Virus record (IMG/VR): IMGVR_UViG_3300027816_000051
Coordinates: 1-64,000 of that record
Strand: one strand, 5' to 3'
Length of the DNA: 64,000 bases
The position numbers and the translations under genes were made by a program. Below are positions 1 through 9,475 of the stretch, piece after piece. Position 1 is the stretch's first letter; each line of letters opens with the position of its first letter. The notes below the pieces were generated by a model. That model saw nothing but the letters and a program-made list of their open reading frames with translations, searched no databases and was not told the origin of the DNA.

Positions 1-57
1 TCGAACTGGCATCTTCAGATTGGAAGTCTGAAGTAATGACCGTTATACGATATTCGC
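1..57 (-). tRNA. tRNA-Gly(TCC), 3' end cut by window edge
   Basis: Minus strand GCGAATA...TCAGA CTTCCAA TCTGA...GTTCGA; acceptor 3' strand lies outside the window. Confidence 0.9.
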
Positions 58-64
58 TTAAAAG

Positions 65-125
65 GTAGACCCGGGCCCAACAAGCCGTTTTCGTACGCAA
101 CGGAAGGGCCCTTTTTAAGGTCTAC
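65..125 (-). ncRNA. Candidate structured spacer RNA (nested rod hairpin)
   Basis: GTAGACC/GGTCTAC, GGGCCC/GGGCCC and CCGTT/AACGG nested stems. Confidence 0.4.
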
Positions 126-526
126 TTACTTTGATATCTCCATTTCCTACCCTTACCTCTTCGACCAAAAAATTCTGTTAAAGAATGACAGTTAGGACAG
201 AGTAACTCAACATTTGATAAATCATGATTATGTGGGTTACCATCTATATGATTAATTTGGATTGGGACTATCCCTGTATGTTCATTCACTTTATCCCATT
301 CACAAACCATACATTTTTCACCAAATTTTTCTATCAAATATTTTTTTGTTATCTCGTGGATTGTGTCACATCTTGTATATCTTTCAAAATTATTTTCCTC
401 TAAAGATTTGAAAATATTTTTTCTTTGATATTCGAATTGACACTTATTATTACAGTAAAGATTCCTATTAGGAATTTCACAACCACAATTCAAACATTGT
501 TTTTCTTTTTTTTCTCTATTTCTCAT
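122..526 (-). CDS. HNH endonuclease (free-standing, inside tRNA array)
   Basis: CxxC pairs plus C-terminal QINHIDGNPHNHDLSNVELLCPNCHS HNH motif. Confidence 0.9.
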   Translation of the reverse strand: MRNREKKEKQCLNCGCEIPNRNLYCNNKCQFEYQRKNIFKSLEENNFERYTRCDTIHEITKKYLIEKFGEKCMVCEWDKVNEHTGIVPIQINHIDGNPHNHDLSNVELLCPNCHSLTEFFGRRGKGRKWRYQSK

Positions 527-573
527 TGGACAACCATTATGTAATAATAAATATTGGTTGTCCGATAAAAGTG

Positions 574-645
574 AGCGACAGAATGGAATTGAACCATCGT
601 CCCCACCTTGGCAAGGTGGTATAATAACCGTTATACGACTATCGC
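574..645 (-). tRNA. tRNA-Gly(GCC)
   Basis: GCGATAG/CTGTCGC acceptor; CCACC TTGCCAA GGTGG anticodon arm; GTTCAATT T-loop. Confidence 0.93.
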
Positions 646-646
646 G

Positions 647-705
647 TGGAGTGGTCTTCCCATAACGATTTCCTTAACAGGTTTTGGAGTTAAGGGTGCG
701 ACCAC
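647..705 (-). ncRNA. Candidate tRNA-like minihelix / structured spacer ending in T-CCA
   Basis: GTGGTC/GACCAC closing stem followed by TCCA; internal CCTTAAC/GTTAAGG hairpin; too short for a cloverleaf. Confidence 0.35.
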
Positions 706-714
706 ATGATGATA

Positions 715-1167
715 TTATTTTTGATTTTTTTGTTGCCACTCATATGACACCGTATTTTCGGTAATCGGACCACCTTTTGCCCATGTTTTACATGTTCTTG
801 CGGAGTGACATTTAAAGTGATGCATCCAACAGTATCCTAATCTACCACTATCATCAGAAACCGAACCTGGCATACATTCATCCATTCTTGGTGATATATC
901 AAATGCAACACAATTACCACATAGTGATTTTTTAGCGGCTTCAACAGTCGTATTCCAATCGGATGCAACCATTTCCCAATAATCACCGGGTTCATCAATA
1001 TTAAGTGGACCATATTTTATATAATCCGCTTTTATTGATTTGTCTCTATTATTAGTGTTCAACTCTAAATCTTGAGTTGCTTTAGGACACTCCATTTCGG
1101 CTTCAGATAATAATCTTTTGTTTAATCTTTCGATAAGTTGTTTTTTCTTTTTTAATTCAATTCCCAT
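715..1167 (-). CDS. Cys/His-rich hypothetical phage protein
   Basis: Start moved to MGIELKK (1167) because the ORF-track N-terminus abuts tRNA-Ile2 and a TATTTATA motif sits at 1180-1187; CGNC, CWMHHFKC and C motifs suggest metal binding. Confidence 0.8.
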   Translation of the reverse strand: MGIELKKKKQLIERLNKRLLSEAEMECPKATQDLELNTNNRDKSIKADYIKYGPLNIDEPGDYWEMVASDWNTTVEAAKKSLCGNCVAFDISPRMDECMPGSVSDDSGRLGYCWMHHFKCHSARTCKTWAKGGPITENTVSYEWQQKNQK

Positions 1168-1192
1168 GATTTTTTTATATATAAATATCTCG

Positions 1193-1266
1193 TGGTCCCT
1201 CACGGGCTTGAACCGTGGACCTACCGATTATGAGTCGGGTGCTCTAACCAACTGAGCTAAGGGACC
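1193..1266 (-). tRNA. tRNA-Ile2(CAT), lysidine type
   Basis: GGTCCCTTAGCTCAGTTGGTTAGAGCA..GACTCATAATC..GGTC closely follows the bacterial ileX-type pattern; G1-C72. Confidence 0.8.
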
Positions 1267-1268
1267 AA

Positions 1269-1345
1269 TGGTAGTGGTGACGGGATTTGAACCCATAACC
1301 TTGACGGTATAAGCGTCCTGCTCTCACCAATTGAGCTACACCACC
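1269..1345 (-). tRNA. tRNA-Ile(TAT)
   Basis: Cloverleaf with anticodon loop CTTATAC; CCA encoded. Confidence 0.88.
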
Positions 1346-1887
1346 AAATCCAACGAAAACTCTATAATCGTACTCATTAAATGTTCTTCGTCATAGATTT
1401 TTATGTTCTCAAGTTCGATGTTATAAGAACACATATCACAATCCCATAATGCAAATCTTAAACCTTTTTTGAAATCATCCATATCTCGAATGTTCAAAAC
1501 ACCCATGTGACAATAAAGAGGATTGGGTAGGTATTTCCTTTCCAACATTTTATTGTGTTGGTGGTATAAGTCCCATTTTTCTTTATTGCCACTTTCATCC
1601 TTACCATTCCATTCCCCACCATGTTGTGTTGTTACATACCATTCGGTGTCCAATCTTTCATTCTCTAATGAATCTTCTTCAGATACCTCAATGACATTAC
1701 GAGTTTGTAACATATCAGTTGATAGGGTTGGGAGATAATTGTGAACGATTTCCAAACCAACATAATGACCAAGTTGATATTCTGCGGTTAAACTATTTTT
1801 CCACTCGATTCTTTCTTGTTTGAACCTTTCCTCCATTTCAGGAGTGATTGAATCCATCATACTTTTAATAATGTTATTTCTTTCCAT
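1336..1887 (-). CDS. Hypothetical protein (last codons overlap tRNA-Ile(TAT))
   Basis: Start moved to MERNNII (1887); the upstream part of the track ORF is tRNA-Tyr sequence. Confidence 0.75.
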   Translation of the reverse strand: MERNNIIKSMMDSITPEMEERFKQERIEWKNSLTAEYQLGHYVGLEIVHNYLPTLSTDMLQTRNVIEVSEEDSLENERLDTEWYVTTQHGGEWNGKDESGNKEKWDLYHQHNKMLERKYLPNPLYCHMGVLNIRDMDDFKKGLRFALWDCDMCSYNIELENIKIYDEEHLMSTIIEFSLDLVV

Positions 1888-1901
1888 ACTATTACTTTTT
1901 G

Positions 1902-1984
1902 TTGAAAGGGAGGGATTCGAACCCCCGTACCCCGAAGAGAGCAAATTTACAGTCTGCCGGTTTTAACCACTCACCCACCTTTCA
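1902..1984 (-). tRNA. tRNA-Tyr(GTA)
   Basis: GCAGA CTGTAAA TTTGC anticodon arm; long variable arm; GTTCGAAT. Confidence 0.93.
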
Positions 1985-1990
1985 TTGTTG

Positions 1991-2071
1991 TACCGAAGAA
2001 GGGACTCGAACCCCCACGCAATTACGCGCGACATCCTAAGTGTCGTGTGTCTACCATTCCACCACTTCGGC
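1991..2071 (-). tRNA. tRNA-Leu(TAG)
   Basis: GCCGAAG acceptor; CGACA CTTAGGA TGTCG; long variable arm. Confidence 0.93.
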
Positions 2072-2076
2072 AAAGT

Positions 2077-2140
2077 GTAGGACATCGCTTAACCTACGGT
2101 GTTGCTAGCATTACACACCTTCGATGTTTCCATCAGCGAT
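2077..2140 (-). ncRNA. Candidate compact structured RNA with GAAA tetraloop and crossing pairing
   Basis: ATCGCT/AGCGAT, GATG-GAAA-CATC, GGTGT/ACACC, GTAGG/CCTAC. Confidence 0.5.
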
Positions 2141-2147
2141 TTTTTTG

Positions 2148-2219
2148 CTCCCCGACCAAGATTCGAACTTGGGACCCAACGGTTAACAGCCGTTTGCTCT
2201 ACCACTGAGCTATCAAGGA
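2148..2219 (-). tRNA. tRNA-Asn(GTT)
   Basis: AACGG CTGTTAA CCGTT anticodon arm; canonical cloverleaf. Confidence 0.95.
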
Positions 2220-2224
2220 ATTTG

Positions 2225-2298
2225 TAGGGAAAACAGGACTCGAACCTGCGACCCCCTGGTCCCAAACCAGGTGCGCTAACCAACTGCGCTACTTCCCT
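2225..2298 (-). tRNA. tRNA-Pro(TGG)
   Basis: CCTGG TTTGGGA CCAGG anticodon arm. Confidence 0.95.
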
Positions 2299-2305
2299 AT
2301 TAAAA

Positions 2306-2445
2306 AAGATAGTGATGGAGTACCCGTCTCGCTCCAATCTTAACGGCTTCTTCTGAGTTTTATCAGTGCACCGGCCGAGGGTGATGAACACTATGAACCT
2401 TACAACTACTTTGTCGACTTTCATTGTAAGAGTGACCACTATCTT
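2306..2445 (-). ncRNA. Candidate multibranch ncRNA (~140 nt)
   Basis: Perfect 9-bp closing stem AAGATAGTG/CACTATCTT enclosing CTTACAA/TTGTAAG, CGGC/GCCG, CTGA/TCAG and TGGAG/CTCCA stems. Confidence 0.55.
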
Positions 2446-2447
2446 AG

Positions 2448-2519
2448 TAGGCCCACCAAGACTCGAACTTGGAACATCTCATTAGAAGTGAGAAGTTATA
2501 TCCCTTTAACTATGGGCCC
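2448..2519 (-). tRNA. tRNA-Arg(TCT)
   Basis: TCTCA CTTCTAA TGAGA anticodon arm. Confidence 0.95.
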
Positions 2520-2522
2520 ATT

Positions 2523-2724
2523 AAAATGAAAACCTCCTTCTACGCTCACCGTAGTTGTAGATTTGATTGGACATAGTTTACTGTCCACCTGTTGACGTGC
2601 ACATCAGAGCAGGGTCCATCACAGTTCACTTTGGGTCATGTAACTCATTTGGGTAGCTAATCCCAAGAGCCAAAGTTTCTTTCAACGGTGCTAATCCGTC
2701 CTCTGTAAGGAGTTTTTCATTTTT
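2523..2724 (-). ncRNA. Candidate multibranch ncRNA (~200 nt)
   Basis: 16/17-bp terminal stem; several internal hairpins, two with ATTAGC loops. Confidence 0.6.
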
Positions 2725-2725
2725 G

Positions 2726-2810
2726 TACCGAGGATGGGAGTCGAACCCACACGAACATTACTGTCCAAGGGATTTTAAGTCCCTCATGTCTACCATTCCA
2801 TCACCTCGGC
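2726..2810 (-). tRNA. tRNA-Leu(TAA)
   Basis: AGGGA CTTAAAA TCCCT; long variable arm. Confidence 0.95.
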
Positions 2811-2821
2811 ATTTACCAATT

Positions 2822-2840
2822 CCAATATGTCAAAGAACAA
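2822..2840 (-). promoter_or_regulatory. boxA-like antitermination element
   Basis: TTGTTCTTTGACATATTGG, identical to 5482-5500; resembles rrn boxA. Confidence 0.6.
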
Positions 2841-2871
2841 ATCTAATCAAAATATAAACAACAAAATCTTA

Positions 2872-2906
2872 AAAACAAAAAACCCGAACTTTTTTTGAGT
2901 TCGGGT
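2872..2906 (-). terminator. Intrinsic terminator of tRNA leader 1 (attenuator-like)
   Basis: ACCCGAACT-loop-AGTTCGGGT followed by T-rich tract. Confidence 0.8.
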
Positions 2907-2930
2907 CTTCTTATTAGTAGGTTAAGTTCC

Positions 2931-3035
2931 TTACACTTTTAAAAACTCCGAACATGGGTCACATAAATATATACCTCTCCCATTACCACTTAGTGGGTTG
3001 TTCAAGGGTTGTTGTATGTAAACCATTTTCATCAT
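2931..3035 (-). CDS. Putative leader peptide (34 aa, MMKMVYIQQPLNNPLSGNGRGIYLCDPCSEFLKV)
   Basis: Read by hand; lies between a consensus promoter and a terminator; its 3' end contains a strand complementary to the terminator 5' arm. Confidence 0.55.
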   Translation of the reverse strand: MMKMVYIQQPLNNPLSGNGRGIYLCDPCSEFLKV

Positions 3036-3052
3036 TTTGTTTATAACTATCA

Positions 3053-3083
3053 CAAAGATACAAAAAGTTTTTTAATTTCCAAG
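3053..3083 (-). promoter_or_regulatory. Bacteroidota sigma70-type promoter
   Basis: CTTG-N19-TATCTTTG. Confidence 0.8.
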
Positions 3084-3099
3084 TTTTTTTAAAAAAAAA

Positions 3100-3342
3100 T
3101 TAAAATAAATCTTCACACCATATTGGAGTCTTTTCACCAACGTAAGAACCGGAAACATTAAATTCAAAATATTCTACCGCTTCTGTCATATCCATTCCTT
3201 GATTCATAAGTATAGTGATACACTTCTCAACAGAATAGATTAATCTCATTGAAGATGTTTCAATTCCTATTACCGCATCATCAAATCCATCAGCAATTAA
3301 GATTTGTTCATCTTCGTATTGTTCTAAAATTTTTTCTAACAT
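3100..3342 (-). CDS. Hypothetical phage protein
   Basis: Start moved to MLEKIL (3342); ADGFDDAVIG...EYFEFNV..SYVGE.TPI is a protein-like pattern; upstream part of the track ORF is tRNA-Glu. Confidence 0.8.
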   Translation of the reverse strand: MLEKILEQYEDEQILIADGFDDAVIGIETSSMRLIYSVEKCITILMNQGMDMTEAVEYFEFNVSGSYVGEKTPIWCEDLF

Positions 3343-3370
3343 ATTGGTTTTTTTTAATTTAATTTCAGTG

Positions 3371-3442
3371 TAGCCCGACGGGGAATCGAACCCCGCTTTC
3401 ATCCGTGAAAGGGACGTGTCCTAACCGATAGACGACCGGGCC
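3371..3442 (-). tRNA. tRNA-Glu(TTC)
   Basis: CGTCC CTTTCAC GGATG anticodon arm. Confidence 0.93.
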
Positions 3443-3448
3443 AATTTG

Positions 3449-3536
3449 AGGAGAGTGAGGGATTCGAACCCCCGGAACCCTCACGAGTTCTCCTGATTTC
3501 AAGTCAGGTGCAATAAACCAACTCTACCAACTCTCC
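3449..3536 (-). tRNA. tRNA-Ser(TGA)
   Basis: CCTGA CTTGAAA TCAGG; long variable arm; discriminator U. Confidence 0.93.
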
Positions 3537-3540
3537 AATT

Positions 3541-3746
3541 ACCCCACCTGAGATTACGGTGAGTAGTCATTTCGGTTTATTTTCTTTCAAACAACCTGAA
3601 GGGCGTCCCCGTTAAAAAAAGTCAACACTACTGGGAGGAGGTGTGTCGCTCTCCTTTGTTCCCATGAAGTCCCACTCGCGCCGTAGACTTTCTGCGGAAT
3701 CATTCTTAAAGTCTTGATTCGAAGACTCTGAGTATCTCTTACTCAT
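3541..3746 (-). ncRNA. Candidate structured ncRNA (~205 nt)
   Basis: GC-richer non-coding spacer with hairpins TGAGTA/TACTCA, AGTCTT/AAGACT, GGAG/CTCC, AGTAGT/ACTACT, CTCACC/GGTGGG. Confidence 0.45.
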
Positions 3747-3748
3747 TG

Positions 3749-3820
3749 CGGTCCCACCGGGAATCGAACCCGGCACTTCGCCGTGACAGGGCGATATTAT
3801 AGCCGATTAACTATGAGACC
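3749..3820 (-). tRNA. tRNA-Asp(GTC)
   Basis: TCGCC CTGTCAC GGCGA; G73. Confidence 0.95.
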
Positions 3821-3826
3821 AATCGG

Positions 3827-3900
3827 AGCCTCCTGTCGGATTCGAACCAACGACCCGCTGATTACAAATCAGCTGCTCTGGCCAACTGAGCTAAGGAGGC
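3827..3900 (-). tRNA. tRNA-Thr(TGT)
   Basis: GCTGA TTTGTAA TCAGC. Confidence 0.95.
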
Positions 3901-3906
3901 AATAGT

Positions 3907-3990
3907 GGGTCAGAGTAGTCACGGCCACCTCTGTTCCTTCTGACCCTTGTCATAACCGTGGCAAGATGTGGCTCGACCCTAATTATGACC
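3907..3990 (-). ncRNA. Candidate two-hairpin RNA with loop-loop complementarity
   Basis: GTCATAA/TTATGAC and GGGTCAGA/TCTGACCC stems; loops carry GCCAC/GTGGC and CACGG/CCGTG complements. Confidence 0.5.
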
Positions 3991-3995
3991 ATTTG

Positions 3996-4067
3996 TTGCG
4001 GGGGTCGGATTCGAACCGACGACCTTTAGGTTATGAGCCTAACGAGCTACCACTGCTCTACCCCACG
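3996..4067 (-). tRNA. Initiator tRNA-fMet(CAT)
   Basis: C1:A72 mismatch (CGTGGGG/CCCCGCA); TTAGG CTCATAA CCTAA. Confidence 0.88.
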
Positions 4068-4068
4068 A

Positions 4069-4085
4069 TATATTTCAAAGAACAA
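4069..4085 (-). promoter_or_regulatory. boxA-like element (variant)
   Basis: TTGTTCTTTGAAATATA immediately 5' of tRNA-fMet. Confidence 0.5.
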
Positions 4086-4123
4086 ATAAAATATAAGAAG
4101 TAAATTCCATATTTCAAAATGTT

Positions 4124-4201
4124 TGGTTGCGGGACCCGGACTCGAACCGGGAACTTCAGCTTATGAGACTGACGAGATGACCACTTTCTACGCATCCCGC
4201 A
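4124..4201 (-). tRNA. Atypical tRNA(CAT), fMet-like with irregular D-arm
   Basis: TGCGGGA/TCCCGCA acceptor, TCAGT CTCATAA GCTGA, CCA encoded; about 3 extra nt before the D-stem. Confidence 0.7.
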
Positions 4202-4206
4202 ATGTT

Positions 4207-4283
4207 TGGTTGGAATAATAGGAATCGAACCTATAACCTTTCGCGTATCAGACGAATGCTCTAACCAATTGAGCTATATTCCA
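4207..4283 (-). tRNA. tRNA-Ile(GAT)
   Basis: TTCGT CTGATAC GCGAA; CCA encoded. Confidence 0.95.
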
Positions 4284-4286
4284 ATT

Positions 4287-4364
4287 TGGGGTAAATAATC
4301 GGATTCGAACCGACGACCTTCTGGACCACAATCAGACGTTCTAACCAACTGAACTATATCTACC
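4287..4364 (-). tRNA. tRNA-His(GTG)
   Basis: Loop TTGTGGT; encoded G-1 opposite C73; CCA encoded. Confidence 0.93.
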
Positions 4365-4372
4365 ATTTATAA

Positions 4373-4423
4373 ATTATAAGGTTCAAACCTTATAATGAAC
4401 CATTATAAGTCTCACACCTTATA
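4373..4423. repeat. Chain of overlapping short inverted repeats around TTATAA
   Basis: ATTATAAGGTTCAAACCTTATAATGAACCATTATAAGTCTCACACCTTATA. Confidence 0.6.
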
Positions 4424-4426
4424 TTG

Positions 4427-4500
4427 AGGTCCCGAGTGGATTCGAACCACCGAATAAGAGTTTTGCAGACTCCCCCCTTAAGCCACTTGGGTACAGGACC
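4427..4500 (-). tRNA. tRNA-Cys(GCA)
   Basis: GGAGT CTGCAAA ACTCT; U73. Confidence 0.93.
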
Positions 4501-4501
4501 G

Positions 4502-4576
4502 TGGTGATTCCTAAAGGACTCGAACCCTTACTTCAACGTCCGTAGCGTTGCGTGCTATCCATTACACCAAAGAACC
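4502..4576 (-). tRNA. tRNA-Arg(ACG)
   Basis: CAACG CTACGGA CGTTG; CCA encoded. Confidence 0.93.
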
Positions 4577-4577
4577 A

Positions 4578-5006
4578 TTACTTAATTCGTTCATCCCATT
4601 CTTCTTGGGTCCCCAATCTAATTGGAACGAACAATGCAAATCCATCATCATCTTCAAAATGGTTACAATCATCCTCTCTCCAACCAAACTTATATCTCAT
4701 GTGTATAAATTTGTTTGTCTCTTGATTCCATCTTGCGATTGTGGTATTTCTATGTTCACCAATATAAATTTGACCATTTACTAAATCTTTTTTAGGAATC
4801 GCACCTGCGTCAATTAGTTTCGGAACATAGAACTCTCTCCATTCTTTTTCATCCACTCTTGGAAGAGTTGGGACATCTTCGGGATTATTAATCTTTGGTA
4901 AATTCTCCCAATGATTCCTAATCATTCTTTCCCTCTCTTCTTTTAGTTTCATTTTCTCCGCTTCAAATTTCATTTTGACGGCGTTGATGTTATCATTTCT
5001 TTCCAT
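4578..5006 (-). CDS. Hypothetical protein
   Basis: Start moved to MERNDNI (5006); upstream part of the track ORF is tRNA-Trp/Val sequence. Confidence 0.8.
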   Translation of the reverse strand: MERNDNINAVKMKFEAEKMKLKEERERMIRNHWENLPKINNPEDVPTLPRVDEKEWREFYVPKLIDAGAIPKKDLVNGQIYIGEHRNTTIARWNQETNKFIHMRYKFGWREDDCNHFEDDDGFALFVPIRLGTQEEWDERIK

Positions 5007-5028
5007 GTCGTTTATTTTTAAAAGTTTG

Positions 5029-5099
5029 CACAGGTGGAGAGATTCGAACTCCCAACAACGGTTTTGGAGACCGGTATGATACCCTTTCACTACACCTGT
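5029..5099 (-). tRNA. tRNA-Trp(CCA)
   Basis: CGGT CTCCAAA ACCG anticodon arm. Confidence 0.93.
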
Positions 5100-5107
5100 G
5101 TATTGTG

Positions 5108-5180
5108 TAGTCCCTGTCGGATTCGAACCGACGACCCTCTGCATGTAAGGCAGACGCTCTCCCAACTGAGCTAAGGAACT
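5108..5180 (-). tRNA. tRNA-Val(TAC)
   Basis: TCTGC CTTACAT GCAGA. Confidence 0.95.
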
Positions 5181-5190
5181 ATGAAAGGAA

Positions 5191-5313
5191 AGAGGAAGAT
5201 GGTTCAGTGGACATCCTCTTTTACGATTGGCGTTACTTCAGGTGAATATCTGCAAACTCCGAATACATCATCCAATATTCACTCTCGAGATATTGATGTA
5301 TCATTCCCCAATC
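5191..5313 (-). ncRNA. Candidate pseudoknot/switch RNA
   Basis: GATTGG/CCAATC closing stem; crossing TACATCA/TGATGTA and GTGAATAT/ATATTCAC stems; trailing GAGGA/TCCTC hairpin. Confidence 0.5.
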
Positions 5314-5321
5314 AACCTTTG

Positions 5322-5395
5322 TGTCCCCGATGCGACTCGAACGCATAACCCCCACATTAAAAGTGTGGTGCTCTAACCAATTGAGCTACGAAGAC
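5322..5395 (-). tRNA. tRNA-Lys(TTT)
   Basis: CCACA CTTTTAA TGTGG. Confidence 0.95.
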
Positions 5396-5400
5396 AAATG

Positions 5401-5473
5401 TGGTACCGACAGGAATTGAACCTGTGACACCCAGATTTTCAGTCTGGTGCTCTACCAACTGAGCTACGGTACC
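5401..5473 (-). tRNA. tRNA-Phe(GAA)
   Basis: CCAGA CTGAAAA TCTGG. Confidence 0.95.
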
Positions 5474-5481
5474 ATTTTAAA

Positions 5482-5500
5482 CCAATATGTCAAAGAACAA
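5482..5500 (-). promoter_or_regulatory. boxA-like antitermination element
   Basis: TTGTTCTTTGACATATTGG, identical to 2822-2840. Confidence 0.6.
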
Positions 5501-5505
5501 CTTTG

Positions 5506-5575
5506 TGGACACTGTGGGAATCGAACCCAATCGTTCTGATTGCAAATCAGACGGTCTGCCGTTGACATCAGGCCC
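5506..5575 (-). tRNA. Atypical tRNA-Ala(TGC)
   Basis: TCTGA TTTGCAA TCAGA; G3:U70 present; bulged or mismatched acceptor stem; A at position 8. Confidence 0.75.
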
Positions 5576-5582
5576 ATAAAAC

Positions 5583-5610
5583 AAAAAAACCTCGAGATTT
5601 CTCCCGAGGT
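5583..5610 (-). terminator. Intrinsic terminator of tRNA leader 2 (attenuator-like)
   Basis: ACCTCGGGA-GAAA-TCTCGAGGT followed by a T run. Confidence 0.85.
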
Positions 5611-5638
5611 TCCTTTATATCGTTTTAAACTAAACAAC

Positions 5639-5728
5639 TTACAAGACACCTCGGGACATGCAAATATCAGCCACCTCCGCCCATTTTGAACAGATTGTAA
5701 ATGACATTGTATGTGTAAAGCGTCTCAT
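5639..5728 (-). CDS. Putative leader peptide (29 aa, MRRFTHTMSFTICSKWAEVADICMSRGVL)
   Basis: Read by hand; between promoter and terminator; contains TCCCGAGGT, a perfect 9-nt complement of the terminator 5' arm. Confidence 0.6.
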   Translation of the reverse strand: MRRFTHTMSFTICSKWAEVADICMSRGVL

Positions 5729-5758
5729 TGAAGTTTTATTTAATTTTAAAATCTTTTA

Positions 5759-5790
5759 CAAAGATAATAATAAGTATGCTGAAAAACAAG
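5759..5790 (-). promoter_or_regulatory. Bacteroidota sigma70-type promoter heading the tRNA array
   Basis: CTTG-N20-TATCTTTG. Confidence 0.8.
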
Positions 5791-5843
5791 AAAAGTTTGA
5801 AATTTTTTTAAAAAAATATATATAACAATCTCGATTGCCGAGG

Positions 5844-5851
5844 TATTTATA
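5844..5851 (+). promoter_or_regulatory. Putative phage late-promoter motif TATTTATA
   Basis: Same octamer precedes many structural genes on either strand. Confidence 0.6.
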
Positions 5852-5887
5852 GTAAACCAAATAAATAAACTAAACTAAATTACAACT

Positions 5888-6142
5888 ATGAACTTCAAAA
5901 AATGGATTATTGACCTTTTCAAAGATGAAAGAGGGTCAACTTCAATCAAACCGGTAATCGCCCTTTTAGGTGCATTATTCCTTTGCGGAACCATGATGGC
6001 AAATTCTTTTACACATGGTGACATTAAACCATCAGAAGAATTGGTAAACGCGGTGATGGTCATTACCGCTATTGGAATGGGTGCAGATACTTTAGATAAG
6101 TTCTCACATAAAAAGAAATCAGACGACGAAGTTTCTGAGTAA
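5888..6142 (+). CDS. Small 2-TM membrane protein (holin-like)
   Basis: Two hydrophobic segments and a charged C-terminus. Confidence 0.6.
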   Translation: MNFKKWIIDLFKDERGSTSIKPVIALLGALFLCGTMMANSFTHGDIKPSEELVNAVMVITAIGMGADTLDKFSHKKKSDDEVSE

Positions 6143-6147
6143 AAATT

Positions 6148-6172
6148 ATGGGGTTAGATAACCCCATTTTTT
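6148..6172 (+). terminator. Intrinsic terminator
   Basis: ATGGGGTT-AGAT-AACCCCAT plus T run. Confidence 0.7.
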
Positions 6173-6179
6173 CTTTTTT

Positions 6180-6677
6180 GTGATGAAGAGACTGCCCATC
6201 ATATTATTATTATTTCTAATATCATTTGGATTTTCGAATCTGAATGCCCAAACTATTGTTGTTGATACGGTAATCAATAACATTAAAATTGGTCCGTTCA
6301 CCGAAAATAAGAATTTGGCTTTCGGTGTTAAAAATATAATTGAAGAAATCATCAATGAACAGGATAGTTTAATTCTGATTACAGATAAAAATAAAGCAGA
6401 CTACAAAATTAAAGTTGAACTCATATTTTTTGACATTGTAACGACTAACTCGGGGGTTAGTATTTTTCACGAAGACAAAACAACCACCGTCATAAGAATG
6501 AAAGGTGTATTGTACAAAGGTGATAAAAAAATTAAACAGGAATTTTCGGAAGGTAAATCAACCGAAATTTCAACCTCAACCATAATGATTGATGAGGGTG
6601 GTAAATTCAATCAACAATCTGCTAGTTCGGCATTAAAGAAAACAACTCAAAACCTAATAAACAAACTAATACTATGA
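6180..6677 (+). CDS. Exported protein, probable CsgG/TolB-N-like fold
   Basis: Sec signal peptide; C-terminal G.S.....KFNQQSASSALKK parallels the CsgG-like protein at 9477. Confidence 0.6.
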   Translation: MMKRLPIILLLFLISFGFSNLNAQTIVVDTVINNIKIGPFTENKNLAFGVKNIIEEIINEQDSLILITDKNKADYKIKVELIFFDIVTTNSGVSIFHEDKTTTVIRMKGVLYKGDKKIKQEFSEGKSTEISTSTIMIDEGGKFNQQSASSALKKTTQNLINKLIL

Positions 6678-8590
6678 AAAAATTATTATTTATCCTAACC
6701 GCGTTAATTTTTACGACGACCGCGTTTTCTCAAACTACGCCACAGATTGGTAATCCTGTTGCGTATAAAACAATCAAAAGGGGTGACACCCTTGATGTTG
6801 TGTTTAAATACACACCAGCATCTTCTGTTGATGTTAGAACTTTCCAAGTTGATTTTCAATATAGAAAACAACTTTTCACTCACGTATCAACAACTGTCGA
6901 CCCAACTGTGAGTACTATGACACCAGCACTTTCGATTAAGTTCTTTAACAACTACAAATACTCAAGCTACAGTTCGGGAACTGGTTTGTACTCATATTCA
7001 ACGGATACAAATTACACTGTGGCAAGAAACTTTTTGGTTTTGTCAAGTGGTTCTCAAATCACCCAAGACACCTTTTTGATTCACAACAAATTTATCATCA
7101 ACGATGTTGAATCGAACTTCGACGCGGACAGTGTTGAAATAAACTGGGCTCGAATGTTCAAATATGACGGTACTACAATAGGTGATAACATTGCAATCTT
7201 AGATGTTCAAGACATGCATCTTGAACTTTTGGGTAACTTGGTTATCAGTGGTGTTGTTGAATTACCGCCAACAATGAAACTAAATGGTAGAAGACCAACA
7301 GTTATATGTACAAAATACAACACAGGTACATTTGTATCATCAGCACTTTGTGACACTGCGGGTTTCTACTCACTTAACAACGTAGATAAAAATACTAAGT
7401 ATAAATTACTTGTAAGATTCCCCGCGGATAGTATGGAAGTTTTCAGAGATTACGCAGTGACAATATCAGACGCGGTAAAAACATATGATGAATATACAGT
7501 AACTGATGTAAACCAAGGATTTGGTCAACAATATTTGAAAAATGGCTTGGCTTATCTAATAGGTGATATGAACCAAAACGGAAAGTTAGATGGTGGTGAC
7601 CCATACTTGATTTATGCAAACGTTAGTGGTATGAAAAAAATTGACACCACAACCATGATTAGAACATTCCACGCTGATGTTTATGATTCATTAGTGTTAG
7701 GTTCAACACAATGGAATGATTGGCCAAATCATTTAACCGCCACCAATTTTATTACTGATAGTGTTGGATTAACTAATAAGACAGTAAACATTAAGTACTT
7801 TATTCAAGGTGATGTTGACAGAACTTACTCATCGAGAGTATGGAACTCATCAGGTGTATTAGTAGCTAAGGCGGTGTTTAAAGGTAAATTAGATGTTGAG
7901 ATACCTAATACCGCATCATCAGGTAATCAACCAATATACGTACCATTTAATGTAAACACTAATGGTGATAATAATTATGGTCTACAGTTTGAAATGAAAT
8001 ATGATAAAAACAAGGTTAAATTTGAAGAAATCATATCTAATTTTAACGGAGGTCCATGGTTACAGTACGTTACACATGACGCAACTGCTGGTACAATTAG
8101 ATTTGGTGGTATGAATAACCAATTTAAAGATGGTTTAATTGGTCAAGCAACACCATTTAAATTAAAATTTTCACCTATTGGAAATAATGATATTGTGAGT
8201 AATATTTACGTTAGACAATTAATGGACGCATCCGATGAAAGAGGTGACCACTTGAATATTGACTTAGTTAGTAGTGTTGCTGTTATTATGTACAAAATGG
8301 CACCACCTATGAATCAAGACATTGATGAAATTACAGCATCAATTCGTCCAAACCCAACTGGTGGTTGGTTTGAATTAGAAGTAAAATTTCCCAACCCAAA
8401 CATGTCAATGAATGTTTCCATCTATGATAATAGAGGTCAACTAATTAAACAAGTTGGTTCTGTTACCACTAACTATATGGAAACAACTGCCTACAAACAA
8501 ATTGATATGAGTTCTGCATCATCAGGTAATTATTATCTGATTTTGAATAATTATAATAAACAATTAACAAGACAATTTATAAAAGTTTAA
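6674..8590 (+). CDS. T9SS type-A-sorted protein with cohesin-like and dockerin-like modules
   Basis: Signal peptide; GDMNQNGKLDGGDPYLI Ca-loop and later QGDVD; GLQFEMKYDKNKVKFEEI...IRFGG cohesin-like; C-terminal IRPNPT...IYDNRGQLI...GNYYLIL...QFIKV sorting domain. Confidence 0.8.
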   Translation: MKKLLFILTALIFTTTAFSQTTPQIGNPVAYKTIKRGDTLDVVFKYTPASSVDVRTFQVDFQYRKQLFTHVSTTVDPTVSTMTPALSIKFFNNYKYSSYSSGTGLYSYSTDTNYTVARNFLVLSSGSQITQDTFLIHNKFIINDVESNFDADSVEINWARMFKYDGTTIGDNIAILDVQDMHLELLGNLVISGVVELPPTMKLNGRRPTVICTKYNTGTFVSSALCDTAGFYSLNNVDKNTKYKLLVRFPADSMEVFRDYAVTISDAVKTYDEYTVTDVNQGFGQQYLKNGLAYLIGDMNQNGKLDGGDPYLIYANVSGMKKIDTTTMIRTFHADVYDSLVLGSTQWNDWPNHLTATNFITDSVGLTNKTVNIKYFIQGDVDRTYSSRVWNSSGVLVAKAVFKGKLDVEIPNTASSGNQPIYVPFNVNTNGDNNYGLQFEMKYDKNKVKFEEIISNFNGGPWLQYVTHDATAGTIRFGGMNNQFKDGLIGQATPFKLKFSPIGNNDIVSNIYVRQLMDASDERGDHLNIDLVSSVAVIMYKMAPPMNQDIDEITASIRPNPTGGWFELEVKFPNPNMSMNVSIYDNRGQLIKQVGSVTTNYMETTAYKQIDMSSASSGNYYLILNNYNKQLTRQFIKV

Positions 8591-8594
8591 AACT

Positions 8595-8933
8595 ATGAGC
8601 GACGAAACAAACGTACCAGAATCTGACGGAACATGGTCAGGCCTTAAGAAAACATTAATCGGAACTATTTCAACCGCAATTTTAGCTGGTGGTACATGGT
8701 TTACTACTACTCTTATGGGTGGTGGTGAAGAAAAAAATGAACCCACACCAACTCAACAATCGGCACCTGTTATTAATTTAAATGTAGATAATTCTTCTAA
8801 GAACACATCATCAAGTGGTGGGGGAAATACTACAATTATAAAAGAAAGAGTGGTTGAAAAACCATCCAAATCAGAACCTTCTAAACCTAAAAAAGAAGGT
8901 GATGAATTTAAAGAAAAAGAACCACAATGGTAA
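8595..8933 (+). CDS. Membrane-anchored low-complexity protein
   Basis: One N-terminal hydrophobic segment; Ser/Pro/Lys/Glu-rich tail. Confidence 0.75.
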   Translation: MSDETNVPESDGTWSGLKKTLIGTISTAILAGGTWFTTTLMGGGEEKNEPTPTQQSAPVINLNVDNSSKNTSSSGGGNTTIIKERVVEKPSKSEPSKPKKEGDEFKEKEPQW

Positions 8934-9475
8934 ATAATCAACCAACCGGATTTAAAGACCTTCTTAATTCAATGATGAAAAGAAGGTGGTTTATTACCGC
9001 GATTGTTTTAGGTGGATTTATGTTTATTATGGCTGGAATATTTGCCGCCATAATTGGTAAAAATGAAATAGGTGGAGAATGGAAAGAACTTCTTCTTTTA
9101 CTTCTTGGTGCTTTCATTGGTTCTTATGGTAAAATCATTGACTATTGGTTCAGTGATACCGATAAAGATAAAATGTTAGTACAAAAAATGGATGAGGAAG
9201 ATGGTACATCTTTGTCAAACACCGCCGATATGAAAACACCAATCAATCAAAGTTTAGATGAATCTACCCCTCAAGTCACTCCTCAAGTCACCCCCCAAGT
9301 TGGTGTGGAAATAGACGAAGATGGTGATGGTGTAATGGATGGTTTAGATTTTGATAATGATGGTATCATAGATGAATATTTTGAACATCGTCAATGTGAG
9401 CACGTTTGGGGCGACCAAGATAATGACGGTGATTTAGAATGTTTGAAATGTGGTAAGATTAAAGACCCTGAGTAA
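8927..9475 (+). CDS. 2-TM membrane protein with DxDxDG Ca-binding-like repeats and Cys/His motif
   Basis: Two TM segments; DEDGDG, DFDNDG, DQDNDG; CEH...CLKC. Confidence 0.75.
   Translation: MVNNQPTGFKDLLNSMMKRRWFITAIVLGGFMFIMAGIFAAIIGKNEIGGEWKELLLLLLGAFIGSYGKIIDYWFSDTDKDKMLVQKMDEEDGTSLSNTADMKTPINQSLDESTPQVTPQVTPQVGVEIDEDGDGVMDGLDFDNDGIIDEYFEHRQCEHVWGDQDNDGDLECLKCGKIKDPE

What the first reader, a model, noticed from the sequence alone, without database searches (positions are those of the whole stretch)
2872..3083. Attenuator-like leader 1: promoter, 34-aa uORF, anti-terminator strand, terminator, then boxA and tRNAs
Seen (minus): consensus promoter (3083-3053); uORF 3035-2931; its last codons carry GTTCGGAGT (2953-2945), complementary with one bulge to the terminator 5' arm ACCCGAAC; terminator 2906-2872 with U-tract; boxA at 2840; tRNA-Leu(TAA) onward. 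Known: this layout matches ribosome-mediated transcription attenuation. Inference: a ribosome reaching the uORF end masks the anti-terminator and transcription stops, while a stalled or absent ribosome lets RNA polymerase read into the tRNAs. I know of no described phage tRNA operon controlled this way.
Basis: partly seen in the sequence, partly recalled or inferred. Interest (0 to 1): 0.8.

Follow-up and report, generated by a model that had tools for sequence, protein, structure and literature searches.

The report
Codon-sampling attenuators controlling phage tRNA genes
A freshwater jumbo phage places, in front of each block of its tRNA genes, a tiny gene whose codons are the very codons those tRNAs read, followed by a stop/go RNA switch, so the phage probably makes tRNAs only when ribosomes run short of them, a control circuit not described before.

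Summary
The attenuation reading is strongly supported by comparison with related sequences, though not yet by experiment.

The window holds two parallel leaders (3083-2822 and 5790-5482, minus strand). Each has:
- a Bacteroidota-type promoter;
- a short ORF;
- an antiterminator strand at the ORF end;
- a strong intrinsic terminator;
- an identical boxA-like 19-mer, followed by tRNA genes.

The new result is that the leader peptides are codon samplers. Codons 2-24 of uORF1 sample all 12 tRNA species downstream of leader 1. I predicted three of these from the uORF, and a 100%-identical contig that runs past the window start carries them. uORF2 samples all 14 species between the two leaders (Fisher p = 2e-8).

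The same module occurs in 39 of 54 distinct contexts of the 19-mer in IMG/VR, forming 28 uORF clusters, and in the published 735-kb phage LR756501. Across clusters:
- uORF codons match their own array (0 of 20,000 permutations; the correct frame is best in 26 of 26).
- Both the antiterminator/terminator pairing and the start-region/antiterminator pairing co-vary (0 of 20,000 each).

This is ribosome-mediated attenuation with a new target and a new sensing logic. I found no paper describing it.

The parts
3053..3083 (-). Promoter P1: CTTG (3083-3080), 19-nt spacer, -7 box TATCTTTG (3060-3053). Predicted transcription start about 3048.
   Evidence: Sequence. Consensus and position of the -7 box from PMC9723704. 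Twin promoter at leader 2. RNA-library contig X17 record 19 starts at 3042.
2931..3035 (-). uORF1, a 34-codon leader peptide MMKMVYIQQPLNNPLSGNGRGIYLCDPCSEFLKV plus TAA.
   Evidence: The frame is conserved in the 81%-identical relative L018 and in more distant L036 and L007.
2964..3020 (-). Sensing codons 6-24 of uORF1 (TAC ATA CAA CAA CCC TTG AAC AAC CCA CTA AGT GGT AAT GGG AGA GGT ATA TAT TTA). Each is read by one of the 12 tRNAs downstream of leader 1, and all 11 non-Met species are sampled.
   Evidence: No 19-codon window among 15,382 in the phage's own long ORFs is as readable by this tRNA set (maximum 16 of 19).
3023..3038 (-). Segment 1: the start-codon region, which pairs with the antiterminator strand once the terminator has formed (anti-antiterminator).
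   Evidence: Minimum-energy and centroid folds. Own versus permuted pairing across 28 leader clusters is -7.97 against -5.39 kcal/mol, reached by 0 of 20,000 permutations.
2941..2953 (-). Segment 2: antiterminator strand GUUCGG-A-GUUUUU in codons 28-32 of uORF1.
   Evidence: It forms 12 bp plus one bulge with 2910-2899, duplex -14.6 kcal/mol. It is present in the minimum-energy fold of the transcript that lacks the 3' arm. Covariation shown.
2870..2911 (-). Segments 3 and 4: intrinsic terminator. 5' arm 2910-2898, loop 2897-2891, 3' arm 2890-2882, T tract 2881-2870.
   Evidence: -18.3 kcal/mol. RNA-library contig X16 record 13 ends at 2878, inside the U tract.
2822..2840 (-). boxA-like 19-mer TTGTTCTTTGACATATTGG, 11 nt before tRNA-Leu(TAA).
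   Evidence: Exact repeat at 5500-5482. Found in 69 IMG/VR loci, mostly directly after a terminator and before tRNAs. The identical 19-mer lies 120 nt before the 23S rRNA in a Balneolaceae rRNA spacer.
1..2810 (-). tRNA block 1, controlled by leader 1: Leu(taa), Arg(tct), Pro(tgg), Asn(gtt), Leu(tag), Tyr(gta), Ile(tat), Met(cat), Gly(gcc) and Gly(tcc) (partial at 1-57). Gln(ttg) and Ser(gct) follow beyond the window start. Small ORFs and structured RNAs are interspersed.
   Evidence: The continuation is seen in L038, which is 100% identical to window 1-8989.
5759..5790 (-). Promoter P2: CTTG (5790-5787), 20-nt spacer, TATCTTTG (5766-5759). Predicted transcription start about 5754.
5639..5728 (-). 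uORF2, a 29-codon leader peptide MRRFTHTMSFTICSKWAEVADICMSRGVL. Codons 2-21 sample all 14 tRNA species between leader 2 and leader 1. Antiterminator strand 5656-5643; segment 1 at 5728-5717.
5578..5617 (-). Terminator 2: 5' arm 5617-5602, loop GAAA, 3' arm 5597-5582, T tract.
   Evidence: -19.9 kcal/mol; antiterminator duplex -18.2. A weak His_leader resemblance (E = 0.78) is treated as chance.
5506..5575 (-). Non-canonical tRNA-Ala(UGC)-like gene between terminator 2 and boxA.
   Evidence: Rfam tRNA, 31.8 bits. ARAGORN calls Ala(tgc) at the same place in relatives L011 and L061. The GCG codon of uORF2 matches it under strict wobble and GCT under relaxed wobble.
5482..5500 (-). Second copy of the boxA-like 19-mer, 8 nt before tRNA-Phe.
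3370..5473 (-). tRNA block 2, controlled by leader 2: Phe, Lys, Val, Trp, Arg(acg), Cys, His, Ile(gat), Met x3, Thr, Asp, Ser(tga), Glu. It contains one ORF, 4578-5006; the 80-aa ORF 3100-3342 lies just downstream of this block, before leader 1. An internal promoter-like site plus boxA variant lies at 4117-4067.

Best explanation
Each leader is a ribosome-mediated transcription attenuator of the classical four-segment kind, placed in front of a block of phage tRNA genes. Its leader peptide is a codon sampler: it contains at least one codon for each tRNA species encoded downstream.

Proposed steps for leader 1:
1. The host sigma-A RNA polymerase starts at about 3048 (inferred).
2. A ribosome starts at AUG 3035 on an A-rich leader without a Shine-Dalgarno sequence, and melts the segment 1:2 helix (inferred).
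3. Codons 6-24 each need one of the 12 tRNAs of the downstream block (shown).
4a. If decoding is fast, the ribosome reaches codons 28-34 or the stop and covers strand 2953-2941. The terminator begins 19 or more nt after the stop, so it folds freely and transcription ends in the U tract (inferred; geometry consistent with PMC4824070).
4b. If any sampled codon is decoded slowly because its tRNA is scarce, uncharged or cleaved, the ribosome lags four or more codons upstream. The 12-bp antiterminator then captures the terminator's 5' arm and the polymerase reads through (inferred).
5. The polymerase next transcribes the boxA-like 19-mer, which probably loads the host NusB/S10 antitermination complex so that the long untranslated tRNA array is transcribed without Rho termination (inferred from sequence and position).
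6. More tRNA speeds up decoding of the uORF and shuts the gate. This is negative feedback, or tRNA on demand (inferred).

Leader 2 does the same for the upstream block. The two attenuators act in series on transcripts from P2.
For: **Anatomy.**

**Codon match in this genome.**
- For codons 2-24 of uORF1 against 2-21 of uORF2, counts of codons read only by block 1 or only by block 2 are [[18,1],[1,17]], Fisher p = 2e-8.
- 12 of 12 and 14 of 14 tRNA species are sampled.
- The match holds at isoacceptor level: ATA/AGA/AGT in uORF1 against ATC,ATT/CGC,CGA/TCA in uORF2.
- A prediction made from the uORF, that Gln(ttg) and Ser(gct) lie beyond the window start and that the partial tRNA at 1-57 is Gly(tcc), was met in a 100%-identical longer contig.

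**Relatives.**
- 39 of 54 distinct contexts of the 19-mer have a terminator, and all 39 have a uORF of at least 15 codons ending 17-39 nt before it.
- Over 26 uORF clusters, the own array gives recall 0.93 and F 0.70, against 0.67 and 0.47 for other arrays; 0 of 20,000 permutations reach this.
- P(cognate codon in uORF | tRNA species in the array) = 0.93, against 0.45 when the species is absent (odds ratio 15).
- The uORF frame beats both other frames in 26 of 26 clusters.
- Matching codons concentrate three to five or more codons upstream of the antiterminator (0.65-0.71 against 0.40-0.44, p = 3e-6). That is the spacing expected from a ribosome footprint of about 10 nt beyond the A site (PMC4824070).

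**RNA switch.**
- uORF end against its own terminator arm: -10.95 kcal/mol, against -7.0 for other leaders' arms; 0 of 20,000 permutations.
- Compensatory changes occur in alignment A2.
- The 1:2 pairing is supported.

**Other.**
- The same rule holds in the published 735-kb phage LR756501.
- RNA-library contigs include one that ends in the U tract (2878) and one that starts at 3042 and reads through into tRNA-Leu.
- Leader-peptide attenuation has been reported as likely in Flavobacterium amino-acid operons (PMC9723704).
Against: - Nothing was tested experimentally. Translation of the uORFs, termination at the hairpin and its dependence on tRNA supply are all inferred.
- Each sampled codon occurs only one to three times, whereas classical attenuators use runs of regulatory codons. 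Sensitivity to loss of a single tRNA may therefore be low.
- A few leaders have weak antiterminator complementarity (L011, L061, L015).
- Precision is only 0.59. This is partly because arrays are cut by locus ends and because the first and last codons serve as RNA segments 1 and 2.
- Leader clusters are not phylogenetically independent, so the permutation p-values overstate the number of independent observations. There are roughly 14-16 distinct families.
- The RNA contigs are of low depth, carry no strand information and could derive from DNA carry-over.
- A -7-like box (TAGATTTG, 2845-2838) between terminator and boxA could in principle give attenuator-independent transcription.
- The host is unknown.
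Confidence: 0.8

Rival explanations
1. The same attenuator reports amino-acid starvation or general translation capacity (charged tRNA, ribosome availability), not tRNA abundance. The codon diversity simply makes it a broad translation-health sensor.
For: Ribosome stalling cannot distinguish an absent tRNA from an uncharged one. One leader samples all 20 amino acids in 31 codons, which looks like a general probe.
Against: A general probe would not need to follow the content of each array. Yet the uORFs differ between the two blocks of one genome at isoacceptor level, and they track gains and losses of tRNAs between relatives: Thr and Val in L036, Phe in L052, only N/D/E/Y/C/I/M in L035 and L045. 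Making more tRNA would not relieve amino-acid starvation.
Confidence: 0.12
2. There is no regulation. The uORF is an independent micro-protein gene with its own promoter and terminator, or the hairpin merely ends the upstream operon, and the tRNAs are made from other promoters or by leaky read-through.
For: A promoter, a short ORF and a terminator together are also the layout of a small gene. A -7-like box lies between terminator and boxA at 2845-2838. RNA-library reads run from the upstream ORF into uORF1.
Against: The peptide sequence is not conserved between leader classes, whereas the codon-to-tRNA match, the frame, the stop-to-terminator spacing and two mutually exclusive pairings are. 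The extra -7-like box is absent from homologous leaders L036, L007 and L051 and has a short 16-nt spacer.
Confidence: 0.04
3. The RNA switch is real, but it is set by something other than the ribosome, for example direct binding of a tRNA or a protein to the leader, as in T-box or protein-mediated attenuation.
For: Alternative terminator and antiterminator pairings are also used by T-box and protein-dependent attenuators that sense tRNA or amino acids.
Against: No T-box or other known leader family matches. The signal is tied to the reading frame (26 of 26 clusters) and to codon position relative to the antiterminator, which only a translating ribosome can read.
Confidence: 0.03
4. It is a chance arrangement.
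For: Short ORFs, TAnnTTTG motifs and 6-9 nt complementarities are common in AT-rich DNA.
Against: No permutation out of 20,000 reached the observed value in any of three independent tests, and a prior prediction was confirmed.
Confidence: 0.01

Closest known systems
Leader-peptide attenuators of amino-acid biosynthesis operons (trpL, hisL, leuL, thrL, ilvL, pheL of Enterobacteria; likely counterparts in Flavobacterium, PMC9723704)
   Same: A promoter-proximal short ORF; four RNA segments forming 1:2, 2:3 (antiterminator) and 3:4 (terminator plus U tract); regulatory codons placed so that a stalled ribosome frees segment 2 and a ribosome at the stop codon masks it.
   Different: The regulated genes are tRNAs, not enzymes. 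The leader holds one to three codons for each of 5-20 different tRNAs instead of a run for one or a few amino acids. The element sits in a phage, and a boxA-like element follows it. There is no sequence or Rfam relationship (His_leader E = 0.78 only).
pheM leader of the E. coli pheST operon (own knowledge)
   Same: Ribosome-mediated attenuation that controls a component of the translation apparatus according to decoding of cognate codons.
   Different: It controls an aminoacyl-tRNA synthetase and senses one amino acid. This comparison rests on memory and was not tested here.
T-box riboswitches
   Same: They sense tRNA status and switch between terminator and antiterminator upstream of translation-related genes.
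   Different: T-boxes bind uncharged tRNA directly and need no ribosome. Here there is no T-box match, and the signal is frame- and codon-dependent.
boxA/Nus antitermination of rRNA operons, phage lambda nut sites and CRISPR arrays
   Same: The element resembles the bacterial boxA consensus (from memory; not confirmed in a paper) and stands at the head of a long untranslated array. The identical 19-mer occurs at the boxA position of a bacterial 16S-23S spacer.
   Different: Binding of NusB/S10 was not tested. Here boxA lies directly after an attenuator terminator, so the go/stop decision precedes loading of the complex. boxA has not, to my knowledge, been reported for phage tRNA arrays.
Phage tRNA arrays of large phages (for example the 735-kb LR756501)
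   Same: A block of 20-30 tRNA genes. LR756501 carries the same uORF-terminator-tRNA module.
   Different: Nine literature searches turned up no description of regulation of such arrays by leader peptides.

Membership tests
Ribosome-mediated (leader-peptide) transcription attenuator | A short translated ORF between the promoter and the regulated genes | tested here: met
   uORF1 3035-2931 and uORF2 5728-5639. All 39 related terminator-bearing leaders have an ATG ORF of at least 15 codons ending 17-39 nt before the terminator. Translation itself was not shown.
Ribosome-mediated (leader-peptide) transcription attenuator | An intrinsic terminator (hairpin plus U tract) before the regulated genes | tested here: met
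   -18.3 and -19.9 kcal/mol in the window; -13 to -21.5 kcal/mol in relatives.
Ribosome-mediated (leader-peptide) transcription attenuator | An antiterminator (2:3) that excludes the terminator, with the segment 2 strand at the end of the leader ORF | tested here: met
   12-bp and 13-bp duplexes of -14.6 and -18.2 kcal/mol, present in the minimum-energy fold when the 3' arm is absent. Own arm against other arms -10.95 against -7.0 kcal/mol, 0 of 20,000 permutations. Two compensatory pairs in alignment A2.
Ribosome-mediated (leader-peptide) transcription attenuator | A segment 1:2 helix (anti-antiterminator or pause hairpin) | tested here: met
   The minimum-energy and centroid folds pair the start-codon region with the antiterminator strand in both leaders. 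Own against permuted -7.97 against -5.39 kcal/mol, 0 of 20,000 permutations. A pausing role was not tested.
Ribosome-mediated (leader-peptide) transcription attenuator | Regulatory codons cognate to what the operon supplies, placed where a stall frees segment 2 | tested here: met
   This is a new form of the feature: the codons are cognate to the downstream tRNAs.
Ribosome-mediated (leader-peptide) transcription attenuator | Read-through changes with translation of the leader | not testable with these tools
   The only data are low-depth metatranscriptome contigs, one compatible with a terminated form and one with a read-through form.
Rfam leader families (His_leader, Thr_leader, Trp_leader and others) | A score at or above the family's gathering threshold | tested here: not met
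   The best is His_leader at 25.4 bits against a threshold of 49 (E = 0.78) on leader 2. Nothing matches leader 1.
boxA (NusB/S10-binding antitermination element) | A match to the boxA consensus, at the head of an untranslated operon | tested here: inconclusive
   Resemblance of the core GUUCUUUGACA to the E. coli and Bacillus boxA is from memory; I could not confirm the consensus in a paper. The position is as expected, and the identical 19-mer lies 120 nt before the 23S rRNA in one bacterial genome. In the other 17 bacterial loci scanned with Rfam there was no rRNA gene nearby (38 bacterial loci carry the 19-mer in all).
boxA (NusB/S10-binding antitermination element) | Binds NusB/S10 and confers resistance to termination | not testable with these tools
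   No data.
T-box riboswitch | A conserved T-box fold with a specifier loop that binds tRNA | tested here: not met
   No Rfam T-box match at E <= 1 in window 1-8000.

The most novel reading that the evidence does not exclude
Phage tRNA arrays are inducible on demand. The leader peptide is a codon-by-codon probe of the cell's tRNA pool, so the phage switches its tRNA genes on when host tRNAs are lost, whether through host shut-off or through tRNA-cleaving anti-phage defences such as anticodon nucleases. That would make these leaders a built-in sensor for a counter-defence. The design is widespread among large phages of Bacteroidota.
Probability: 0.35. Interest if true: 0.95.

Novelty: new variant of a known kind. 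Interest (0 to 1): 0.9.

Why it matters
Why phages carry tRNA genes, and when they use them, is an open question. Explanations on offer include codon-usage compensation, replacement of a decaying host pool and escape from tRNA-targeting defences.

A leader peptide that lists the codons of the downstream tRNAs would give a direct mechanism: the phage measures decoding speed for exactly those codons and transcribes the matching tRNAs when decoding is slow.

Three consequences follow:
- It extends ribosome-mediated attenuation, the textbook trp paradigm, to non-coding genes and to multiplexed OR-gate sensing of up to 20 codon types.
- It shows that phage tRNA arrays borrow a host rRNA-type boxA element.
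- It gives a sequence-only rule, uORF codons equal the downstream anticodons. The rule can be used to delimit tRNA operons, to find unusual tRNAs (it predicted three beyond the window start, and the weak tRNA-Ala-like gene fits it), and to design synthetic sensors of tRNA supply.

Tried and rejected
- The sigma-70 promoter scan did not list P1. I used the Bacteroidota consensus instead. TAnnTTTG alone is not enriched in the window, so it is not used as evidence by itself.
- A megablast of window 1-8000 against cultured and deposited phages found only tRNA-sized hits. Distant searches with leader 1 and a class-B leader gave only chance-level hits. The Tenacibaculum phage PTm1 hit was a promoter-like stretch before a protein gene, not a leader.
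- Rfam has no family for either leader. The His_leader hit at E = 0.78 is treated as chance.
- The scan of bacterial genomes for the 19-mer placed it at a boxA position in only one rRNA operon. No rRNA lay nearby in the other 17 loci scanned with Rfam, and the remaining loci were ambiguous or inside genes, so the boxA assignment stays inferential. The boxA consensus could not be confirmed in PMC3177189.
- A possible second promoter between terminator 1 and boxA (TTTG-N16-TAGATTTG, 2865-2838) is not conserved in homologous leaders and has a short spacer, so I regard it as unlikely but not excluded.
- By eye, the order of codons in the uORF does not follow the order of tRNAs in the array.
- My first terminator finder missed hairpins with mismatches and was replaced by an RNAfold-based one. 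An automatic start-codon rule mis-set one uORF and was corrected. Alignment A1 held one sequence on the wrong strand and was redone as A2. Searches failed because of a wrong ORF start.
- Nine literature searches found no description of leader-peptide control of phage tRNA genes.
Full report
**1. What is there**

On the minus strand, window 1-5600 is a phage tRNA array. ARAGORN finds 23 tRNAs. There is also a partial tRNA at 1-57 and a weak tRNA-like gene at 5506-5575.

The window belongs to a tailed phage. It encodes a large terminase, portal, major head protein, PolB, a helicase and a ClpB-like ATPase. One protein carries a type-IX-secretion sorting domain, which points to a Bacteroidota host. 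The contig it matches is 288 kb long, and its DNA is found in lake and freshwater metagenomes.

Every item of the finding is present:
- CTTG-N19-TATCTTTG at 3083-3053;
- a 34-codon ORF at 3035-2931;
- GTTCGGAGT at 2953-2945;
- a 14-pair hairpin with a T tract at 2911-2870;
- the sequence TTGTTCTTTGACATATTGG at 2840-2822;
- tRNA-Leu(TAA) at 2810.

The promoter is of the Bacteroidota sigma-A type, with the -7 box TAnnTTTG at -12..-5 (PMC9723704). It is not sigma-70-like.

**2. A second, parallel leader**

At 5790-5482 the same parts recur with different sequence:
- CTTG-N20-TATCTTTG;
- a 29-codon ORF at 5728-5639, whose end UCCCGAGGU is complementary to the 5' arm ACCUCGGGA of a second strong terminator;
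- a tRNA-Ala-like gene;
- an exact second copy of the 19-mer;
- tRNA-Phe.

The terminator arms of the two leaders differ, and the uORF ends differ in step with them.

In leader 1 it is 12 bp with one bulge (-14.6 kcal/mol, against -18.3 for the terminator). In leader 2 it is -18.2 against -19.9. When the 3' arm is left out, the minimum-energy fold contains the antiterminator in both leaders.

With the terminator formed, the antiterminator strand pairs instead with the start-codon region. This is a segment 1:2 helix as in trp (z-scores -2.8 and -7.1).

**3. The leader peptides list the codons of the downstream tRNAs**

Codons 6-24 of uORF1 are Tyr, Ile(ATA), Gln, Gln, Pro, Leu(TTG), Asn, Asn, Pro, Leu(CTA), Ser(AGT), Gly(GGT), Asn, Gly(GGG), Arg(AGA), Gly, Ile(ATA), Tyr, Leu(TTA).

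The tRNAs after leader 1 in the window are Leu(taa), Arg(tct), Pro, Asn, Leu(tag), Tyr, Ile(tat), Met and Gly(gcc). Four codons, CAA twice, AGT and GGG, had no tRNA there. I therefore predicted Gln(ttg), Ser(gct) and Gly(tcc) beyond the window start.

The partial tRNA at 1-57 has anticodon TCC. Contig L038 is 100% identical to window 1-8989, and it continues with Gly(tcc), Gln(ttg), Ser(gct) and then a protein gene.

uORF2 uses Arg(CGC, CGA), Phe, Thr, His, Met, Ser(TCA), Ile(ATC, ATT), Cys, Lys, Trp, Ala, Glu, Val and Asp. These are the 14 species between the two leaders.

I counted codons read only by block 1 or only by block 2. In the part of each uORF where a stall would leave the antiterminator free, the table is [[18,1],[1,17]], Fisher p = 2e-8. 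12 of 12 and 14 of 14 species are sampled. No 19-codon window among 15,382 in the phage's own long ORFs is as readable by block 1 (maximum 16 of 19).

**4. Relatives**

The 19-mer occurs in 69 IMG/VR loci. Of 54 distinct contexts, 39 have a strong hairpin with a T tract within 190 nt upstream, mostly abutting the 19-mer. All 39 have an ATG ORF of at least 15 codons ending 17-39 nt before the terminator core. In 18 of them a perfect TAnnTTTG box lies 25-47 nt before the ATG. The uORFs fall into 28 clusters at 70% identity, roughly 14-16 unrelated families.

Examples:
- MKNLHIITLLGADLEAGD.. precedes Leu, Met, Gly, Ala, Glu, Asp.
- MKTLLDILLVSLMAVALLWDDDAEEV.. precedes Asp, Asp, Glu, Val, Leu, Leu, Ala, Trp.
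- Leaders rich in N, I, C, D, E and Y precede arrays made only of Glu, Asp, Asn, Tyr, Cys, Met and Ile tRNAs.
- A relative of leader 1 (L036) has an array that gains Thr and Val, and its uORF gains Thr and Val codons.
- A 31-residue uORF with all 20 amino acids precedes a 21-tRNA array. No 31-residue window among 15,618 in this phage's proteins has all 20.

Formal tests:
- For 26 clusters with at least 5 downstream tRNAs, the own array gives recall 0.93, precision 0.59 and F 0.70. Other arrays give 0.67, 0.39 and 0.47. No permutation out of 20,000 reaches the observed value.
- P(cognate codon | tRNA species in the array) is 0.93, against 0.45 when the species is absent, odds ratio 15.
- The uORF frame beats both other frames in 26 of 26 clusters.
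- Matching codons concentrate three to five or more codons upstream of the antiterminator (0.65-0.71, against 0.40-0.44 inside or after it; p = 3e-6).

The published 735-kb phage LR756501 has the same module: a uORF with ..KHSKHFSSSSKWF.. before Trp, His, His, Phe, Lys, Ser, Lys.

**5. The RNA switch is conserved**

- The uORF end pairs with its own terminator 5' arm at -10.95 kcal/mol, against -7.0 for other leaders' arms. No permutation out of 20,000 reaches this.
- In an alignment of ten class-B leaders, the antiterminator is 95% paired and has two compensatory double changes. The terminator is 98% paired, also with two.
- The start region pairs with its own antiterminator strand better than with others (-7.97 against -5.39 kcal/mol; 0 of 20,000 permutations).
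- The stop-to-terminator gap of 17-39 nt fits published measurements. A ribosome protects about 10 nt beyond the A site. A terminator 28 bp after a stop codon works at about 90%, and one 5 bp after it at under 10% (PMC4824070). A ribosome at the stop would therefore mask segment 2 but not the terminator.

**6. The 19-mer**

By my recollection its core, GUUCUUUGACA, resembles the bacterial boxA. I could not confirm the consensus in a paper.

It always sits at the head of a run of tRNAs. In some loci it stands without an attenuator, including a variant at 4085-4067 in the window. The identical 19-mer lies 120 nt before the 23S rRNA in a Balneolaceae genome, which is a standard boxA position. In the other 17 bacterial loci scanned with Rfam, no rRNA gene lay nearby.

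I infer that it loads the host Nus antitermination complex after the attenuator has made its decision.

**7. RNA data**

The only data available were assembler contigs of metatranscriptomes, at low depth.
- A 193-nt contig covers 2878-3070 with no differences. Its end lies inside the U tract of terminator 1.
- A 248-nt contig covers 2795-3042. It starts 6 nt from the predicted transcription start and reads through the terminator into tRNA-Leu.
- Another contig runs from uORF2 through terminator 2 into tRNA-Phe.

These fit a terminated and a read-through form, but DNA carry-over cannot be excluded.

**8. Mechanism**

The best-supported reading is classical four-segment, ribosome-mediated attenuation in which the regulatory codons are those served by the downstream tRNAs.
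- Slow decoding of any sampled codon leads to the antiterminator, read-through, boxA and tRNA synthesis.
- Fast decoding puts the ribosome at the stop codon and leads to termination.

This is negative feedback on tRNA supply.

What is shown: the anatomy, the codon/anticodon correspondence, the covariation and the geometry. What is inferred: translation of the uORF, termination, the response to tRNA levels and boxA function.

Rivals are judged unlikely, mainly because the signal depends on reading frame, on codon position and on the content of each array. They are a general starvation sensor, an unrelated micro-gene, a ribosome-independent switch and chance.

**9. Novelty**

The mechanism class is known. 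The target (tRNA arrays, in phages) and the sensing logic (a multiplex one-of-each codon sampler) are, as far as nine literature searches show, not described.

I rate it a new variant of a known kind, with confidence 0.8 in the mechanism and interest 0.9.

Noticed in passing
window 2562-2623 (-): A full-length match to the Rfam freshwater-1 RNA (RF02979; 84.7 bits, threshold 72) sits inside the tRNA array, between tRNA-Leu(taa) and tRNA-Arg(tct). An RNA-library contig covers 2533-2754. Its function is unknown. Being co-transcribed with phage tRNAs may be a clue.
   Followed up: partly
window 2299-2446, 3537-3747, 3901-3994, 5181-5320, 2072-2146, 646-714 (-): Gaps between tRNAs hold 60-210 nt stretches with stable predicted folds and no Rfam or tRNA match. 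For example, 2299-2446 is closed by a 12-bp end-to-end stem at -31.5 kcal/mol. A similar element, sharing GTCGACAA and AAAACTCA-GAAG motifs, precedes tRNA-Phe in locus L006. These may be unknown small RNAs processed out of the array.
   Followed up: no
window 5506-5575 (-): A non-canonical tRNA-Ala(UGC)-like gene with a G3:U70-type pair and a bulge in the acceptor stem. ARAGORN misses it here but calls it in relatives L011 and L061. It always lies between the attenuator terminator and boxA.
   Followed up: partly
window 4067-4117 (-): An internal promoter-like site (TTTG-N19-TATATTTT) plus a boxA variant TTGTTCTTTGAAATATAT directly before tRNA-Met(3995-4067), with no uORF or terminator. It could be a constitutive entry point into the second half of block 2.
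   Followed up: no
window 4124-4200 (-): A low-scoring tRNA with a CAT anticodon (Rfam 35 bits; ARAGORN places the anticodon at position 30). It is one of three CAT tRNAs in block 2 and could be an initiator or a lysidine-modified Ile tRNA.
   Followed up: no
window 6674-8590 (+): A 638-aa phage protein with a signal-peptide-like N-terminus and a type-IX-secretion C-terminal sorting domain (Por_Secre_tail, E = 3e-8). This is a Bacteroidota-specific export tag carried by a phage gene.
   Followed up: no
window 3100-3342, 4578-5006, 1336-1887, 715-1167, 122-526 (-): Small protein genes are interspersed among the tRNAs. Two match PHROG families of unknown function (phrog_13182, phrog_18490). ORF 122-526 has a Cys-rich treble-clef/HNH-like motif.
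   Followed up: partly
L109 (LR756501.1, reverse complement of 201188-213248), about 5758-6000: The 735-kb published huge phage has a uORF-antiterminator-terminator module before Trp, His, His, Phe, Lys, Ser, Lys tRNAs, with a variant boxA (GTGTTCATTGAAATATTG) placed after the first tRNA.
   Followed up: partly
L008, L009, L010, L050, L064 and L027, L028, L039: In these IMG/VR loci the 19-mer follows a tRNA with an odd or 4-base anticodon loop and a structured region of about 200 nt, rather than an attenuator. This is a different, unexplained context for the same element.
   Followed up: no
window 16902-18920 (-): A phage-encoded ClpB/ClpA-like double AAA+ ATPase (AAA_2, E = 1.6e-70).
   Followed up: no
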